From NCBI RefSeq assembly GCF_006345805.1, contig NC_042997.1:174902001-174966000 (forward strand): a stretch of DNA of 64,000 nt. Reading direction: 5' to 3'. The DNA is from Octopus sinensis. Taxonomy: Eukaryota. The notes beneath the pieces were generated by a model. The model saw nothing but the letters and a program-made list of their open reading frames with translations. It ran no database searches and was not told the origin of the DNA. The position numbers were made by a program, and so were the translations under genes. Positions 5,251-41,149 of the stretch are shown here, piece after piece. Numbering within the stretch: position 1 is the stretch's first letter; each line of letters starts with the position of its first letter.

Positions 5251-5612
5251 GGCGGTGGGTTGGCAGAAGCGTTAGCACGCCGGGCGAAATGCTTAGTAGT
5301 ATTTCGTCTGCCGTTACGTTCTGAGTTCAAATTCGCCGAAGTCAACTTTGCCTTTCATCCTTTCAAGGTCGATAAATTAAGTACCAGTTACGCACTGGTG
5401 TCGATGTAATCAACTTAATCCCTTTGTCCTTGTTTGTCCTCTCTATGTTTAGCCCCTTGTGGGCTATAAAGAAATAAGAATCGTTAGCACGCCGGGCAAA
5501 GTACTTTGCGACATTTCGTCCGTCTTAACGTTCTGGGTTCAAATTCCACCGAGGTCGGCTTTGTCTTTTATCCTTTCGGGGATCTTTGTCTTTTATCCTT
5601 TGGTAGAAAGAA
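5251..5612 (+). mobile_element. Family A SINE dimer
   Basis: Head plus two bodies; flanked by ttattggYataaatt (5233-5247 and 5613-5627), a 15-bp TSD with 1 mismatch. Confidence 0.85.
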
Positions 5613-5713
5613 TTATTGGCATAAATTTAAATTTGTAATCTGGATATAGAAACTGGAAGTTTCGAAGTTATCCTCTTTCTCTTTGATTTTCTTTGATTTT
5701 CAAAGAGATGTTC

Positions 5714-10798: not shown

Positions 10799-10811
10799 TT
10801 TGTATATATAC

Positions 10812-10868
<57 letters not shown>

Positions 10869-11080
10869 CATGTATGTATGTATGTATACATGTATGTATG
10901 TATGTATGTGTGTGTATGAATATAAATATACATATGTACATATATATATGTATAAATGTATATATATGTATATTTATTTGTGTAAGTGTATATATTTGTG
11001 AATATATATATGTATGTATATATGTATATATGTGTATATGTATATATGTATATATGTGTATATATATGTATATATATGTA

Positions 11081-11111
<31 letters not shown>

Positions 11112-11116
11112 GTGTG

Positions 11117-11152
<36 letters not shown>

Positions 11153-11224
11153 TGTATGTATGTATGTATGTATGTATGTATGTATGTATGTATGTATGTA
11201 TGTATGTATGTATGCATGTTTGCT

Positions 11225-12320
11225 TGTATGTATGGCCGACACAACGGAACAGCATGCTTCTGTGAAATTTTGTTTTCGACCGTGGAAAAAAGGCGTCCGA
11301 AAGAGTTATTATGTTTCAAACAGCTAACAAGGAAGCTGCCATGAGCAAAACATATGGGAAAAGTCAATTGTCGCTTGAAGACCACTCTTGTTCAGGTTGA
11401 TCTGAACCTCCCAAACTAATGAAAACATCACGAAAATTCATGAACTGATCTTAGAAGACCGTCGCTGAACAATTGAAAACTTGTTGATATGACTGGTGTA
11501 TCCTGGACCTCTTACCAACGGATTTTGAGCGAGGAATCGCGAATGAAAAGAGTTGCAGTAAAATTTATGCCTCGTTTGCTCACGGAAGATCAAAGACAAT
11601 CACAACTTAATTAATGCGTGTCGTGAACTGAAAGAACAGTTGGAAGTTGATCCGAACATTTTTCCAGGGGTCATCACTGCTGACGAAATCTGGTGTTATG
11701 GCTACGAGCCGGAAACAAAGCAGCAATCAAGTCAATGAAAGTAGTCAATGTCACCACGACCCAAAAAAGCGCTTCAAGTGAAGCCCAATGTCAAGACGAT
11801 GTTAATTTTTGTTTCGTTGATGTGAAAGGAATTGTCTACACAGAATTTGTTCCTCCTGGTCAAACTGCTAACCAGACATTTTACTTGGCAGTTCTGAAGC
11901 ATTTGCGAGATGCGTTGAGACGAAAACGCCCCGATCTGTGGTAAATTGGAGAGTGGTAGTTTCATTACGATTATGTGCTTGTGCACACCACTTAGAGTTT
12001 GAGACAGTTTTTACCGGAAAATGGCATGACCTCGCTTACCCACACACCCTATTCACCGATCTTGATCCCAGCGACAATTGTTCTCCCGAACGAAAAATGA
12101 CTTTCGAGGAAAACGTTTGCAGATGTGGAAGAGGGGAAGAAAAATGACGGAGGCATTAAAAGGCATCACTTCGCAAGAGTTCCTGGACTACTTCGAACAG
12201 TGGAAAATGCGTCTGGACCGATGCATAGCTTCAAATGGGGAATACACTGAAGGCGATAAAATTGTAAACATATAAAACTGAGTGAATAAAATAATATTGC
12301 AAAATTGCTGTTTCTTTTGT
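11225..12320 (+). pseudogene. Mariner transposase pseudogene (D,D34D type), many frameshifts and stops
   Basis: Motifs resembling TADEIWCYGYEPETKQQS, FVDVKGIVYTEFVPPGQT, HTPYSPDL, WKMRLDRCIASNGEY. Confidence 0.92.
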
Positions 12321-12389: not shown

Positions 12390-13846
12390 CGTGTGGGAGG
12401 GTTTGAAAGAAAAGGAGATTATGTTGCAATGTTCAGCTGGTCGAACGACTGCATATAAGCGTTAGTGTGTTTGTCCAGGCACAAAAGTCCAGAGTCCTAA
12501 TATTTTAGAAAATTTGAAGACATGTGTGGCGGGCAAAGAGAAGTTTTGATGTTCATGTCATGCCAAAAGGCAACCAAGAAATGTCAGATTTGTAAAACGG
12601 TTTCACTGGACTAAAAGTAGTCTTCAACTTTTCAGAACTTCAGCTTTTCATATACTTTTCTTAACCTGCAAATCTTTCACTCACCTTATAATAAATATGA
12701 ATAATTCTGGGTCAACATGGGAGCCCTTATATAGTTGCTCGACCTGCAGAAATAGCAACCAAATTTTCCTTAGTTTTCTTCATCTGTCGCCGATGTACGC
12801 CAGAGCTCGGAGTCACAGCTAATAGTTTGCCAGACTGTTCCGGGACGTTATAGCCGTCTATATTTTCCAAGGTACAATACGTTTGGCAATAAGACGAGAT
12901 AGTTACGGCTGGAATACCTTTGATTTTACGTCTGTTGCTTGATTAGATTTTATCTGGAGTAAAACGGTTACATTAATAACAACAGCGTTAATTTTTCATT
13001 CTATCATTGATACAAGACCACGATTATTTAGAAAAAGATGATGTTTAAATATTTGACTAAATCGTTTCCTCTGTACATAACAGTTAATCCTGAAATGCAT
13101 GGGCGAGCCACTTGGCCCCTACATTCATTAGCTTCTAATCAACGCAAAGAGACCGAAGATTTCTGAAATGAAAGCTCTGTCCAAACGTCACTAATATAAT
13201 TACGTCATAACCACAATATGGAAAAGTTTAAACTTCTTTGGACTTGAAAATGCTGAAGTCAAATTCATTTTCTTTCTCCCACTTTCTCTCACTTCTTCTC
13301 TCTCTCTTTCTACCCTCTCTCTCTCTCTCCCTCTCTCTGTCACACTCACACGCACAACATACAGACACATACACATCACATGCACACACACACACACACA
13401 TACATACACGCGCGCAAACACACACATAATCACGAAGGCCCTCATATCTATACACACATACACACACCACAGTGACGCACTCATGTACACACAGATAGTG
13501 GTACACACATGCACAAACACACACACACAGACAAACGCATGCGCACACGCGAGAATGCGTGTCAGAGACAAAATGAGTAAGGTCAAAAGGACGGAGATAA
13601 GAGAATGTGAAAGAGACCAAGAGATACACATATACAATCTATACTAACACACACAAATACAGAGTTTCAGACACATTCACACATTTATAACCAAAGTTAT
13701 ATGCGGTCATATGTTTTTCAAAAATAGTGATATATGCAGTCTATCGAACATTTAATAAAGAATCTATTTGGCTTTATTACTGAAACTAGCAGGAATATCT
13801 AATAATATTATATCTAACCAACGAAGGCGGCGAGCTAGAAGAATCG

Positions 13847-13995
13847 TTCGGCCGGAGGATCACTCGGTTCGTCCGTCGATGAAGAGCGCGGCTATCCGTG
13901 AACTGATGCGAATTGCAGGACTCAGAGAACATCGACACTTCGAAGGCACATTGCGGCCCTGGGATCCCATTGTCCCAAGGGCCCCGTCCGGTCGA
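13847..13995 (+). rRNA. 5.8S rRNA: 5.8S rRNA copy, nearly full length, isolated from 18S/28S (probable retrocopy)
   Basis: Recognisable 5.8S sequence: ggaggatcactcggttcgtccgtcgatgaagagcgc...gaattgcaggac...gaacatcgacacttcgaaggcacattgcggccc, with a GC-rich 3' hairpin (ggccctggga/tcccaagggcc); no ITS or 18S/28S sequence in the flanks. Confidence 0.9.
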
Positions 13996-14003
13996 TTTTT
14001 GAA

Positions 14004-14617
14004 GGCGGCGAGCTGGCAGAAACGTTAGCACGCCGGGCGAAATGCTTAGCGGTATTTCGTCTGCTGCTACGTTGTGAGTTCAAATTCCGCCGAGGTCGAC
14101 TTTGCCTTTCATCCTTTCGGGGTCGATAAATTAAGTACCAGTTACGCACTGAGGTCGATATAATCGACTTAATCCGTCTGTCTGTCCTTGTTTGTTTCCT
14201 CTGTGTTTAACCCCTTGTGGGTAGTAAAGAAATCGGTATTTCGTCTGCAGTTACGTTCTGAGTTCAAATTCCGCCGAGGTCGACTTTGCCTGTCATCCTC
14301 TCGGGGTCGATAAATTAAGTTACGCACTGGGGTCGATGTAATCGACTTAATCCTTTTGTCTGCCCTTCTTTGTACCCTCTATGTTTAGCCCCTTGTGGGC
14401 AATAAAGAAATAAGAATCGTTAGACCGCCGGGTAAAACGCTTAGCGGCATTTCGTCTGTCTTTACGCTGTGAGTTCAAATTCCGCTGAGGTCGACTTTGC
14501 TTTCATCCTCTCGGGGTCGATAAAATAAGTACTAGTTATGCACTAGGGTCGATGTAATCGAATAGCGCCCGTCCCACTTCCCCCAAAATTTCAAGCCTTG
14601 TGCCTATAGCAGACAGA
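14004..14617 (+). mobile_element. Family A SINE trimer directly downstream of the 5.8S copy
   Basis: Full head ggcggcgagctggcagaaacgttagcacgccgggcg at 14004; unit junctions at about 14232 and 14412. Confidence 0.92.
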
Positions 14618-14637
14618 AATATTATACCTAACAAGAA

Positions 14638-14870
14638 TGCGGCGAGCAGGCAGAATCGTTTAGGGACGGACAAAATGCTTAGCGGCACTTCGTCCGGTTT
14701 TACGCTCTTGGCTCAAATTCCGCCAAGGTCTACTTTGCCTGTCATTCTTTCGGAGTCTATAAAAAAATGTCTTAGTTAAGCACTGGGGGATCAATGTAAT
14801 AGACTTAACCCTCCGCACACACATACACACGATATTGCAGGTCTTGTGCCAAAATTAGAAGCCAATAAAC
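14638..14870 (+). mobile_element. Older diverged family A SINE
   Basis: gcggcgagcaggcagaatcgtt head, ctcaaattccgcc B-box, degenerate core. Confidence 0.8.
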
Positions 14871-16259
14871 GCGATAGATAACGAAAATATATTTCACCGA
14901 TATTTTCTAAGCATCTTAGAAAAAATAAACTTTGTAATCATTTATTTTAAATGAAAACAAATGAAAAGACCAGTAGAGATCGAGAGACAGAAACAAACAA
15001 GCCTATACCGCAATAAATATGAATTTGTTTTGTAAATGATAGCAGTAAATATTGAATATTTTGTAATTAAAACATGAACTTGAATCAATAATTATAATAA
15101 AATGAAAAGCCTTCTTTAATTAAAATAAATTTTGAATTGTTTTAATTTTTTAAGAATTTTGTAAACAACGGAAATTTTAATAATTGCTTACTTTTAATAA
15201 ATGCAACAATTTTTAGCAAAAGTTACATAATTAACAAGCAGTTCTCTCCATTATAGTATAGTTATCTTGAAAATATTCTCAAACGTTTTAAAAGCAACAA
15301 ACTTAATTTTTACTAAAATACTCACCATGTTTATAGCAATAGTCTGTTGATATACGTATAACTACGTCATGTCACCATTATTTCGTATTCATAGTTTTAA
15401 TTGTCATTCAGTTACACTAAATGCAGCACAGAATTTTGTCAGTGAACAGGTCGCGGTCTCAAAGCGACGAAAATATTTTGGCAAATTGAATTTAAATGTT
15501 GAAGTGAATCTAACGGTTTTTGTGTGTTTCTTAAATGGCTTATAAACAACACCTTCCACGTTGCAATTGTTTTCGTTCCAGCACACGACCTCAGATCAGG
15601 TCACTTGCTATGCAAGTACATCTCTACAATAAATTCCTTTCCGTGAATGTGTCGATTGAAATCCCCGGGTTACTTCAACTGAAATTGATGGTTAAAATTT
15701 CATACGGTTACAGTAACACTACAGTACACCTTGTGACTATGTAATGGTATCAAGCAGCATCTTAAGAACTGACTTGATACTAGTCTTTAGATGTTTGGTT
15801 GTACCCGTGGCGCACACTTTTTTTTTTGTTTCTAATCACTGTGAGTGATTGAAAGAGAGTGAAAATTTCTGAAACGAAAACCTCCACTGACATTATGACG
15901 TCATAATCACAATATGAAAAACTTAAAACTTCTTTGTACTACGTGGAAAATGCTTAAATTCAATCTTCTCCCCTTCTCTCTCCCCCTCTCTCTCTCTCTT
16001 TCTTTTTTTCTTTCTCTCTTTTTCCTTTTCTTCCTCTCACTCTCTCTCCCTTTCTCTCACACATATTCACACACCACATACACATACTGACATACAGGTA
16101 CCCCACACGCTCACGCACACAAACCCACTTACGCATATACATACATACACACACACGCATATATACATATGTATGCATGCATGCATACATACATGTATGT
16201 ATGTATGTATGTATGTATGTATGTATACTCTTTACTCTCTTTTACTCTTTTACTTGTTT

Positions 16260-17735: not shown

Positions 17736-18157
17736 CCATGCTTGTTCGTATTTTGATTATTTTTTTTTTTAAACCAACTCTACCAGTCTTCAAATAAATA
17801 AAAACATAAATAAATAAACATCATGTAATGAAGGAAAAGAAACAGATCAATCTAAATTCTCGTCGCACAGCTAGCAGTAGGTCTGGCAATTGATTTTGAT
17901 TGTGTATAATGTTTTATTTAACCTCTGTGTAAACGTTATCTCCATTGATGAGTTGTAATTATGTTTCCTGACACCCATGGTGTCGTCTCAAATGTTGTTA
18001 GCTCCCATTCATTCATGTGTGAGTTGCAACATTTCTTAAGATATACACACACATACAAACACACACATACGAACGTACACATGCAAAATGCACACCACTC
18101 TGCGAATAACACTTCGTACATATGTGTGTGTGTATATATATATATATGTATATATAT

Positions 18158-18214
<57 letters not shown>

Positions 18215-18779
18215 CATATATATATATACACACACACACACATATATATATATGCGTTCATGTATGTATACGTATGTATGCATGTACCTATGTTTATGTT
18301 TTTGTATGTATATACGATGTATGTGTATATTTACGTACGTATTCACGTATGTATACATACACGCGCGTATATGTATATGTACGTATATATTATATGTATG
18401 CATCCATGTATGTATGTATGTATGTATGTATGTAAGCATGCATATATGTGTATATCTAAGTATGTATGCATGTATATATGCATATGTATGTACATATGTA
18501 TCTTTGTGCATATATGTATATTTGATGTTTGTCTATGTATTTATATATGCATTCATGTATTATGCATGTATATGTATGCACGTACATATGTATGTATATA
18601 TGATGTATGTGTGCTATGTATGTACGTATAGATGTACGTACGGATGGCTGTACGGATGTAAGCGCAGTATGGCTGAATGGTTCAGACGCTTGCTTCGCAA
18701 CAACATGATCCCGGTTTCGATCCCATTGCGCAACATTTTGACTAAATGCCATATTCTATAGCCTAAGAGTGATCGATAC

Positions 18780-22104: not shown

Positions 22105-22173
22105 TGTGTGGTGTTGTGTGTGTGTGTGTCTGTGTTTGTGTACATATATATGTACATATATATATACGTTGTG

Positions 22174-22500
22174 AAGGCGCATGGCTCAGTAGTTAGAGCC
22201 TCGAGCTTACGATCGTGAGGTTGTGAGCTCGAATCCCGGACCCGGCTGTGTGTTGTGTTCTTGAGCAAGACACTTTATTTCGTGTTGCTCCAGTTCACTC
22301 AGCTGTAGAAACGAGGTGCGACGTCGCAAGTGCCAAGCTGTATCGATCTTTTCCTTTCCCTTGGATAACACTGGTGGCATGGAGAGGGGAGACCAGTATA
22401 CATGGGCGACTGCTGGTCTTCCATAAACAACCTTGCCCGGACTTAAACCTGGGAGGGTAACTTTCAAGGTGCAATCCCATGGTCTGTGTCGTGACCGAAG
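22174..22500 (+). mobile_element. tRNA-derived SINE family C (long tail variant)
   Basis: A-box gcatggctcagtagttagagc, B-box agctcgaatccc, then gtgttcttgagcaagacacttt. Confidence 0.85.
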
Positions 22501-22998
22501 GGGGTTTCAGAATATATACATACATATATATATATAACATTTATATTATTATTATTATTATTATTATTATACATACATACATACATACATACATACATAC
22601 ATACATACATACATACATACATACATACACACATACATACATACATACATACATACATACATACATACATACGTACATACATACATACATACGTACGTAC
22701 GTACGTACGTACGTACGTACGTACGTACAAACAAATAACTGCCAGTCTGGATAAGCTTGGATTTTCAGAAAAAGAAATCAACTGATTCGCACATTACAAA
22801 TACAGTTTGTAAGCGGAACAGTAAAACCATGCAAAACTTTTCTCGGGTTTAAAGTCTGACAACATTTTCGTTATCTAGATTCCAAAGATGGAGCTTTGTT
22901 AAAATTCAGCTCTTTCTTCAGAGGAAGAATTTAAATGATTAAAAACAGAAGAGACATAATACATACATACATACATACATACATACACATACATACAT

Positions 22999-40749: not shown

Positions 40750-41048
40750 CTTTCTTCTTTCGCCCTTTTCAAGCCTAGCCCGTTTTCCCGGTTTCTGTGG
40801 CGTATGGGTTCCCCCCAGCTGGACGGCACGCCAGTCCATCGCAACGTTCCTCGAGAAACAGGAAGAGAGAATGAGAGAAAGTTGGGGCGAAAGAGTACAA
40901 CAGGGTTCGCCACCATCCCCTGCCGGAGACTCGTGGAGCTTCAGGTGTTTTCGCTCAATAAACACACAACGCCCGGTCTGGGAATCGAAACCGCGATCCT
41001 CCGACCGCGAGTCCGCTGACCTAACCACTGGGCCATTGCGCCTCCACT
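40750..41048 (-). mobile_element. tRNA-derived SINE family C variant with 11-bp TSD
   Basis: Head gtggaggcgcaatggcccagtggttagg, internal tgcgatggactggcgtgccgtccag; TSD gacgtacacat at 40739-40749 and 41049-41059. Confidence 0.9.
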
Positions 41049-41149
41049 GACGTACACATAGGTAATATAAATTTGAGGGAATATGAAAAGATTTAAGATT
41101 TAAGAAAATTGTAAAGACGGTAACTTGTAGTACGACAATATCTTTAATA

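What the first reader, a model, noticed from the sequence alone, without database searches (positions are those of the whole stretch)
13804..14660. 5.8S rRNA-SINE chimeric retrocopy
Seen: a SINE head fragment (ggcggcgagctagaagaatcgtt, 13826-13848) joins a nearly complete 5.8S rRNA (13847-13995), then ttttt-gaa, then a full family A SINE trimer (14004-14617). No ITS, 18S or 28S sequence flanks the 5.8S, so a mature-RNA template is implied. The block is bracketed by aatattataYctaac (13804-13818 and 14618-14632). The match extends imperfectly (5 substitutions, 2 gaps) to about 45 bp, through the head of the older SINE at 14638, so the 5.8S+SINE unit may have landed inside that older SINE head. 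Either way 5.8S and SINE appear co-inserted. Established: small-RNA/retroelement chimeras (e.g. U6-L1) arise by template switching or RNA ligation, and known SINE heads derive from tRNA, 7SL, 5S, U1/U2 or 28S RNA. I am not aware of a 5.8S-headed family. If this structure is multi-copy it would be a new SINE class; if single, it is a rare chimera that reveals the mechanism.
Basis: partly seen in the sequence, partly recalled or inferred. Interest (0 to 1): 0.9.

Follow-up and report, generated by a model that had tools for sequence, protein, structure and literature searches.

The report
Recurrent 5.8S rRNA–SINE chimeric retrocopy
A dead copy of 5.8S ribosomal RNA fused to a SINE was pasted into an older SINE in one retrotransposition step, and it is one of at least about 23 independently formed fusions of this kind in the genome, not the founder of a new SINE class.

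Summary
Window 13850-13995 is a near full-length 5.8S rRNA copy (Rfam 83 bits) with no ITS on either side. It is followed by TTTTT-GAA and a complete multi-unit SINE.

The structure is multi-copy, but not as a family. I found 18 loci with a 5.8S-to-family-A-SINE junction and about 5 more with other repeat partners. No two junction linkers are alike. The 5.8S ends are ragged but never pass the mature 3' end. Seven loci have their own TSDs around the whole unit. On a tree, the SINE halves scatter among ordinary SINE copies (10 label changes, shuffled mean 10.8). These are repeated independent fusions of the U6/L1 chimera type, and the same SINE also has at least 42 U6 junction loci.

The "SINE head fragment" is most likely the stump of a target SINE hit at a hot spot (113 such sites genome-wide). 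That gives a 9-bp TSD, AGAATCGTT, at 13840-13848 and 14413-14421.

Contigs from two other organism labels carry the 5' junction, so it is not an assembly artefact.

This scan had already noted three other 5.8S-SINE chimeras on other DNA of this genome, each called a one-off.

The parts
13804..13825 (+). Outer direct repeat, 5' copy (aatattatatctaaccaacgaa). Most likely the TSD of the target SINE X. In the alternative reading it is the first half of a 45-bp TSD.
   Evidence: repeat alignment score 23.5 against shuffled maximum 12; sequence.
13826..13848 (+). Stump (positions 1-23) of the target SINE X. Its last 9 nt (13840-13848, AGAATCGTT) are the 5' copy of the chimera's TSD.
   Evidence: 113 genomic sites (control 0) where a SINE-head stump ending ...AGAA(T/A)CGTT(AG) is followed by a new SINE head. 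L015 has the same arrangement.
13849..13995 (+). 5.8S rRNA retrocopy. It covers positions 6/7-153 of the roughly 157-159-nt rDNA 5.8S at 91.2% identity. No ITS1 or ITS2.
   Evidence: Rfam 83.1 bits, full model.
13996..14003 (+). Junction linker: TTTTT, not encoded in rDNA, plus GAA. GAA matches the 1-5 nt A-rich leader seen in front of ordinary copies of this SINE.
14004..14233 (+). Family-A SINE, full first unit (head plus body, tail ...AAAGAAAT).
   Evidence: 86-94% identity to 7 other full units in the window; tree.
14234..14412 (+). Second, head-less repeat unit of the same SINE (starts cGGTATTTCG, tail AAAGAAATA). The multi-unit form is canonical for this SINE.
   Evidence: 32 such unit junctions against 45 heads in 256 kb.
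14413..14617 (+). Remainder of target SINE X, from head position 14 to its own tail. Its first 9 nt (14413-14421, AGAATCGTT) are the 3' copy of the chimera's TSD.
14618..14637 (+). Outer direct repeat, 3' copy (aatattatacctaacaagaat).
14638..14830 (+). Older SINE Y directly downstream. Its head explains why the outer repeat seems to extend to about 45 bp.
   Evidence: a 163-nt contig of organism C spans 14532-14694.

Best explanation
Window 13849-14412 is a chimeric retrocopy. While the reverse transcriptase of the SINE's partner LINE was copying a family-A SINE RNA at a nicked target site, the cDNA was continued on a mature 5.8S rRNA molecule. The most likely route is a template switch from the 5' end of the SINE RNA to the 3' end of the 5.8S, with a few untemplated or tail-derived T-rich bases at the jump. 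The joined cDNA (5.8S, then TTTTT, then the SINE) was integrated in one event into the head of an older SINE at a preferred target that resembles the SINE's own tail. This duplicated AGAATCGTT.

The copy is dead: about 9% diverged from rDNA, and 5.8S RNA carries no promoter of its own. The same accident happened independently at least about 23 times in this genome with 5.8S, and at least 42 times with U6.

Shown: the RNA origin, single-event integration at sister loci, independence of the loci, the hot spot, and presence in other organisms' assemblies.

Inferred: template switching as opposed to RNA ligation, the origin of the T-rich linker, and which of the two nested repeats is this copy's TSD.
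For: 1. RNA origin. The dispersed 5.8S copies start at rDNA positions 3-14 and end at 146-157. None passes ...GAGAGG into ITS2 and none carries ITS1, whereas true rDNA units have both.
2. One-step insertion. TSDs of 11-19 nt abut the 5.8S 5' end and the SINE 3' tail at L025, L028, L030, L058, L065 and L079 (L072 likewise, at a SINE-head hot spot), each above the 95th percentile of the shuffled controls.
3. Independence. All 18 family-A junction strings differ in linker (3-18 nt) and in 5.8S end point, with reversed-pattern controls at 0. The 5.8S parts carry private substitutions only, apart from one variant that is also seen in chimeras with other partners. SINE unit 1 of 13 chimeras is scattered among 22 background units: 10 label changes against a shuffled mean of 10.8, and well-supported branches force at least 3 origins. 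WIN and L015, which look alike, share 1 derived site while L015 shares 9 with an unrelated copy.
4. Other partners. 5.8S is fused to the exact 5' ends of two other interspersed repeats (L012, L060), to a third repeat (L010), to a 45-nt repeat tail (L014) and to a 5'-truncated SINE body (L052).
5. Same process with U6. There are 42 U6-3'-end/linker/SINE-head junctions, control 0.
6. Hot spot. 113 sites have a SINE stump ending ...CGTT(AG) followed by a new SINE head, control 0. AGAATCGTT is present at both 13840-13848 and 14413-14421.
7. Not an assembly artefact. Contigs of organism B (13546-13898, 1 mismatch) and organism D (13546-13912, 9 mismatches and 2 gaps) bridge flank, stump and 5.8S.
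Against: - No RNA or enzyme evidence separates template switching from ligation.
- The T-rich linker is not explained by rDNA sequence. It is longer than the 1-5 nt leader of ordinary SINE copies.
- If AGAATCGTT is the TSD, target SINE X must have inserted exactly at the 5' edge of SINE Y. That is an unexplained coincidence, unless tandem reuse of one target is common here.
- The partner LINE was not found in the sequence held.
- No empty orthologous site was seen.
- The census is a lower bound built from patterns, not a full annotation.
Confidence: 0.8

Rival explanations
1. RNA-level fusion first: 5.8S rRNA and SINE RNA are joined by an RNA ligase (as proposed for U6/L1 through RtcB) or another RNA-processing step, and the fused RNA is then reverse-transcribed as one template.
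For: Most junctions use the complete SINE 5' end with its usual A-rich leader. The layout mirrors U6 junctions in the same genome. PMC11838501 lists RNA ligation as a route to such chimeras.
Against: L014 (only the last ~45 nt of a repeat tail) and L052 (5'-truncated SINE body) fit an early or internal template switch better than end-to-end ligation. From general knowledge, mature 5.8S has a 3'-OH made by exonucleases, not the cyclic phosphate that RtcB needs. Variable extra bases sit at every junction.
Confidence: 0.12
2. A true 5.8S-headed (or stump+5.8S-headed) SINE family: one chimera became a master gene and its transcripts were retrotransposed many times.
For: The junction is multi-copy. 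WIN and L015 share the architecture stump, 5.8S, two A units, X remainder. Twelve of 18 aligned chimeras share one T>C difference from today's rDNA.
Against: No two junctions are alike. The SINE halves do not cluster. WIN and L015 carry different SINE subfamilies. The shared T>C also occurs with other SINE partners, so it is an older rRNA variant. The shared architecture is explained by the hot spot. From general knowledge, 5.8S is a Pol I product without an internal promoter, and this copy has a T5 run right after the 5.8S that would stop Pol III.
Confidence: 0.04
3. Same chimera, different borders: the insert is 13849-14617 (5.8S plus all three units) and it landed in the head of SINE Y with an unusually long 45-bp TSD (13804-13848 against 14618-14661).
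For: The 45-bp repeat is real. A-unit plus X(14-end) composites do move as one unit, as at window 5251-5640 with its own TSD. It removes the need for X to abut Y by chance.
Against: TSDs at the other loci are 9-19 nt. The SINE-head portions of the repeat share no derived differences beyond family similarity. L015 has the same stump arrangement but no matching SINE head after its downstream repeat. The exact AGAATCGTT overlap and the 113-site hot spot are explained only by the nested reading.
Confidence: 0.25
4. Two unrelated insertions that happen to touch (a 5.8S retropseudogene, later a SINE next to it), or a DNA-level rDNA fragment.
For: SINEs make up about 7% of the window, so chance contacts do occur.
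Against: 18 family-A loci, plus about 5 with other partners, have the same polarity and end-to-end geometry against 0 in reversed controls. TSDs enclose both parts. There is no ITS.
Confidence: 0.03

Closest known systems
U6/LINE-1 (and U3, U5, 5S, 7SL, Y, 7SK, tRNA, 28S/LINE-1) chimeric retrocopies of mammals
   Same: A small stable RNA lies 5', in the same orientation as a retroelement 3' part that ends in its normal tail. One TSD pair encloses both. No source-gene flanks are present. Formation is recurrent and independent, with variable junctions. The explanation is template switching or RNA ligation (PMC4476161 listed; PMC11838501 read).
   Different: The 5' partner here is 5.8S rRNA, which is absent from the partner list of PMC11838501. 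Pol I rRNA retrocopies are reported as under-represented in human (PMC5322556). The 3' partner is a full-length SINE rather than a LINE 3' end. The host is a non-mammal (earlier scan notes call it an octopus; I did not verify this). Junctions carry T-rich fillers of up to 18 nt.
Bi- and tripartite chimeric pseudogenes of Magnaporthe grisea (MINE LINE / WEIRD RNA / Mg-SINE)
   Same: Chimeras that include a SINE and an abundant cellular RNA, attributed to one or two template jumps by a LINE reverse transcriptase (PMC2104539, title and abstract).
   Different: Different RNAs, a different LINE clade and a different kingdom. I read only the abstract.
rRNA-derived SINEs (SINE3 and other 5S-headed SINEs, SINE28 from 28S)
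   Same: rRNA sequence joined to a LINE-dependent retroposon body (table in PMC10946416).
   Different: Those are amplified families with a master lineage, and for 5S an internal Pol III promoter. The 5.8S chimeras show no master lineage. No 5.8S-derived SINE is listed in that review.

Membership tests
Chimeric retrocopy of the U6/L1 type | The 5' part is a processed cellular RNA without flanks of its gene | tested here: met
   No ITS1 or ITS2. Copies span rDNA 5.8S positions 3-157 at most.
Chimeric retrocopy of the U6/L1 type | The 3' part is a retroelement in the same orientation, ending in its normal 3' tail | tested here: met
   Family-A SINE with tail ...AAAGAAAT(A).
Chimeric retrocopy of the U6/L1 type | A single TSD pair encloses both parts | tested here: met
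   Clear at seven sister loci. In the window itself two nested candidates exist: a 9-bp AGAATCGTT, or a 22-45-bp outer repeat.
Chimeric retrocopy of the U6/L1 type | Recurrent independent formation, with junctions that differ between loci | tested here: met
   18 distinct junction strings; no clustering of SINE halves.
Chimeric retrocopy of the U6/L1 type | Made by a LINE reverse transcriptase through template switching (or after RNA ligation) | not testable with these tools
   Inferred from anatomy only. The partner LINE was not identified.
SINE family with a 5.8S head | Copies descend from a master: shared junction and shared diagnostic substitutions | tested here: not met
SINE family with a 5.8S head | The head supplies an internal Pol III promoter | not testable with these tools
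   From general knowledge, 5.8S is cut from a Pol I transcript. In this copy a T5 run follows the 5.8S.
rDNA fragment / orphon (DNA-level copy) | ITS or 18S/28S sequence flanks the 5.8S | tested here: not met
   Contrast L002-L009, L011, L013, L016 and L055, which do have ITS flanks.

The most novel reading that the evidence does not exclude
5.8S rRNA is a habitual, not accidental, acceptor for this lineage's LINE/SINE reverse transcriptase. The T-rich linkers would then be fossil records of post-transcriptional U-rich tails on 5.8S rRNA or its decay intermediates, and the chimeras would report on nucleolar RNA surveillance and on where the retrotransposition complex works in the germline.
Probability: 0.25. 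Interest if true: 0.6.

Novelty: new member of a known kind. Interest (0 to 1): 0.4.

Why it matters
Chimeric retrocopies are natural records of which RNAs a LINE reverse transcriptase meets and how it changes templates. In mammals the record is dominated by U6, and Pol I rRNAs are scarce. Here a Pol I product, 5.8S rRNA, is a repeated partner alongside U6, with a SINE rather than a LINE as the 3' half.

This matters in three ways:
- It adds a partner RNA and an animal lineage to the phenomenon.
- It gives a set of dated, independent junctions (5.8S identity to rDNA 89.5-99.3%) for studying template jumps and 3'-end tailing.
- It warns annotators that dispersed 5.8S hits in this genome are retrocopies, not rDNA loci or a new SINE class.

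It does not open a new category.

Tried and rejected
- **tRNA derivation of the SINE heads.** ARAGORN and Rfam call no tRNA in family A or in the other partners, so I do not assert tRNA derivation. Only box-B-like motifs can be read by eye.
- **Partner LINE.** I looked for non-SINE elements sharing the SINE tail in about 320 kb. There were only 3 orphan tail hits, at locus ends or short. The partner was not identified.
- **WIN and L015 as sister copies of one composite master.** Rejected: 1 shared derived site, and the hot spot explains the shared layout.
- **Mean shared-derived counts between chimeras.** These are inflated by truncated rows, so I did not use them. The tree test was used instead.
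- **Rfam microRNA hits at 10-19 kb.** All are below gathering score and lie on TG/TA microsatellites. They are chance matches.
- **Locus retrieval.** The five extra junction loci and the U6 loci are therefore known only from their matched strings.
- **Empty orthologous site.** None was seen in the contigs laid. Short contigs break inside the SINE, so this says little.

Full report
**1. What is in the sequence**

- A 23-nt SINE head fragment lies at 13826-13848.
- A 5.8S-like sequence follows, then ttttt (13996-14000) and gaa (14001-14003).
- Three SINE-like units follow, at 14004-14233, 14234-14412 and 14413-14617.
- A direct repeat brackets the block.

Rfam's 5.8S model matches 13843-14001 over its full length at 83.1 bits, against a gathering score of 42. 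BLAST to the genome's own rDNA 5.8S covers 13850-13995 at 91.2% identity. The bracket repeat scores 23.5 against a shuffled maximum of 12.

**2. The true rDNA, and the absence of ITS**

The window's genome (2.72 Gb) has at least 40 5.8S hits on many chromosomes. Eleven of the loci I fetched are real rDNA units, with the same ITS1 and ITS2 on either side. A second set, mostly on contig C18 at 3.8-4.7 Mb, has another ITS1 but the same ITS2.

All other copies lack ITS. Counted on the rDNA 5.8S, they begin at positions 3-14 and end at 146-157. None passes ...GAGAGG, which lies two bases short of the end of the Rfam model. This is what a mature RNA template predicts.

**3. The junction is multi-copy**

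A BLAST of window 13700-14700 against the fetched loci showed seven other places where the alignment runs from the 5.8S straight into the SINE. Two pattern searches across the junction raised this to 18 loci on 14 chromosome-scale contigs plus one unplaced contig. The reversed-pattern controls gave 0.

The 5.8S is also fused to other partners:
- the exact 5' ends of two other interspersed repeats (L012 and L060 partners, each with several further copies in my sample);
- a third repeat (L010);
- the last ~45 nt of a repeat tail (L014);
- a 5'-truncated family-A body (L052).

Earlier notes of this scan describe three more 5.8S-SINE chimeras elsewhere in the genome, each judged a one-off. I could not tell whether they overlap my list.

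**4. One event per locus**

Seven loci (L025, L028, L030, L058, L065, L072, L079) have TSDs of 11-19 nt or more. At six of them the upstream copy abuts the 5.8S 5' end and the downstream copy abuts the SINE tail ...AAAGAAAT or the X-type tail; L072 lies at a SINE-head hot spot. All score above the 95th percentile of the shuffled controls. L026 has a weaker repeat of about 22 nt, seen by eye. So the 5.8S and the SINE entered together.

**5. A family or repeated accidents**

Four tests agree on repeated accidents.
- **Junctions.** The 18 junction strings all differ. Linkers are 3 to 18 nt, and the 5.8S ends at different bases.
- **5.8S parts.** They carry private substitutions only. The one shared difference from today's rDNA (T to C in GGATCC-C-ATCG) also occurs in chimeras with other partners. 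It is therefore better read as an older rRNA variant.
- **SINE halves.** In a maximum-likelihood tree of the first SINE unit, 13 chimera units are scattered among 22 ordinary units. The label needs 10 changes, against a shuffled mean of 10.8. Well-supported branches force at least three origins.
- **WIN and L015.** These have the same overall layout, yet share one derived site in that unit, while L015 shares nine with an unrelated copy.

The identity of the 5.8S parts to rDNA ranges from 89.5% to 99.3%. The process therefore ran over a long time and may be recent. The window copy is among the old ones.

**6. The same thing happens with U6**

It found 42 loci, with a control of 0. They have the same layout of RNA 3' end, short T/A-rich filler and (A)AG-GCGGCGAGC. 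Earlier scan notes report many such U6-SINE chimeras. The 5.8S chimeras are thus part of a general chimera-forming habit of this SINE's reverse transcriptase.

**7. The head fragment and the borders of this copy**

- Ordinary copies of the SINE carry 1-5 A-rich bases between TSD and GGCGGCGAGC. The gaa before 14004 therefore belongs to the SINE RNA.
- The multi-unit form is canonical: 32 unit junctions against 45 heads in 256 kb.
- Genome-wide, 113 sites (control 0) show a SINE-head stump ending ...AGAA(T/A)CGTT(AG) followed directly by a fresh SINE head. This position, which resembles the SINE tail AAGAAAT, is an insertion hot spot.
- In the window the stump ends ...AGAATCGTT (13840-13848). 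The sequence after the second unit's tail resumes AGAATCGTTAG (14413 onward). L015 does the same.

The rival reading has a 45-bp TSD in the head of SINE Y, with all three units inserted. It is not excluded, and I give it about one chance in four. It avoids the coincidence that X abuts Y.

**8. Independent support from reads**

Sixteen studies hold at least part of the stretch (20 of the 24 runs listed), and runs under six coded organism labels (A-F) hold a third or more of its words. From the contigs laid on 13500-15000:
- one from organism B covers 13546-13898 with one mismatch;
- one from organism D covers 13546-13912 with nine mismatches and two gaps;
- both bridge unique flank, stump and 5.8S;
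- one from organism C spans 14532-14694 (X tail, outer repeat, Y head).

The 5' junction is therefore not an assembly artefact, and the insertion is shared by differently labelled organisms. Contigs break inside the SINE, so the 5.8S/SINE junction of this very locus is not bridged by them.

**9. Mechanism**

The anatomy fits target-primed reverse transcription of a SINE RNA, followed by continuation on 5.8S rRNA. I favour template switching for two reasons:
- two loci join the 5.8S to internal or tail-only parts of the repeat (L014, L052);
- every junction carries variable filler.

RNA ligation before reverse transcription remains possible (for the published options).

The T-rich filler is not rDNA-encoded. 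It could be untemplated addition at the jump, or U-rich tailing of 5.8S. I could not test this. The partner LINE was not found.

**10. Comparison with the literature held**

- A 2024 review of rDNA-transposon relations lists 5S- and 28S-derived elements, but none from 5.8S.
- A 2025 survey of LINE-1 chimeras lists U6, U3, U5, 5S, tRNA, 28S, 7SL, Y and 7SK as partners.
- A study of tailless retropseudogenes had 5.8S in its library and reports Pol I rRNA-derived copies as under-represented.
- Searches for 5.8S with SINE, chimera, retropseudogene or cephalopod found no report of 5.8S chimeras.
- A paper on octopus LINEs does not mention 5.8S.

The library is incomplete, so "unreported" is provisional.

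**11. Verdict**

The feature is real and well-bounded. It is a known kind of event with an apparently new partner RNA, and it is recurrent in this genome. It is not a new SINE class.

Noticed in passing
genome-wide (matched strings), e.g. G000:C6:109777727-109777762: At least 42 loci have the U6 snRNA 3' end joined through a short T/A-rich filler to the head of the same SINE (reversed control 0). U6 is an even more frequent chimera partner than 5.8S.
   Followed up: partly
genome-wide; in the window 13840-13848 / 14413-14421 and the TSD GGTATTTCGTCTTCC of a minus-strand SINE copy in the window (listed as WIN 26488, counted on the reverse strand): There are two insertion hot spots inside SINE heads: after ...AGAA(T/A)CGTT (113 sites) and before GGTATTTCG. 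Both resemble the SINE tail AAGAAAT. They produce nested and tandem SINE arrays.
   Followed up: partly
window 5251-5640: A family-A unit followed by an X-type SINE lacking its first 13 nt sits between one TSD (TTATTGGYATAAATT). This composite therefore moves as a single element.
   Followed up: partly
L018-L024, L027, L029 (G000:C18 3.8-4.7 Mb and unplaced contigs): A second set of rDNA-like units has a different ITS1 but the normal ITS2, with 5.8S 95-97.5% identical to the main rDNA. It may be a diverged or pseudogenised rDNA array.
   Followed up: no
L002-L009, L011, L013, L016 (C2, C3, C17, C18, C19, C27 and unplaced): Apparently intact rDNA units with identical 5.8S lie on at least six chromosome-scale contigs. 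This is either several NORs or assembly scatter.
   Followed up: no
L014:1502-1700 (G000:C4:150658707): A 5.8S copy 98.6% identical to rDNA is joined to only the last ~45 nt of a repeat tail followed by (TCAA)n.
   Followed up: partly
window 40872-41050 and 22169-22513: These are copies of the two other repeat families that also occur as 5.8S partners: the L012 partner (~180 nt) and the L060 partner (~340 nt).
   Followed up: no
window 10800-11230, 16130-16240, 18040-18640: TG/TA microsatellites give dozens of sub-threshold Rfam microRNA hits (mir-297, mir-3149 and others). They are chance matches.
   Followed up: no
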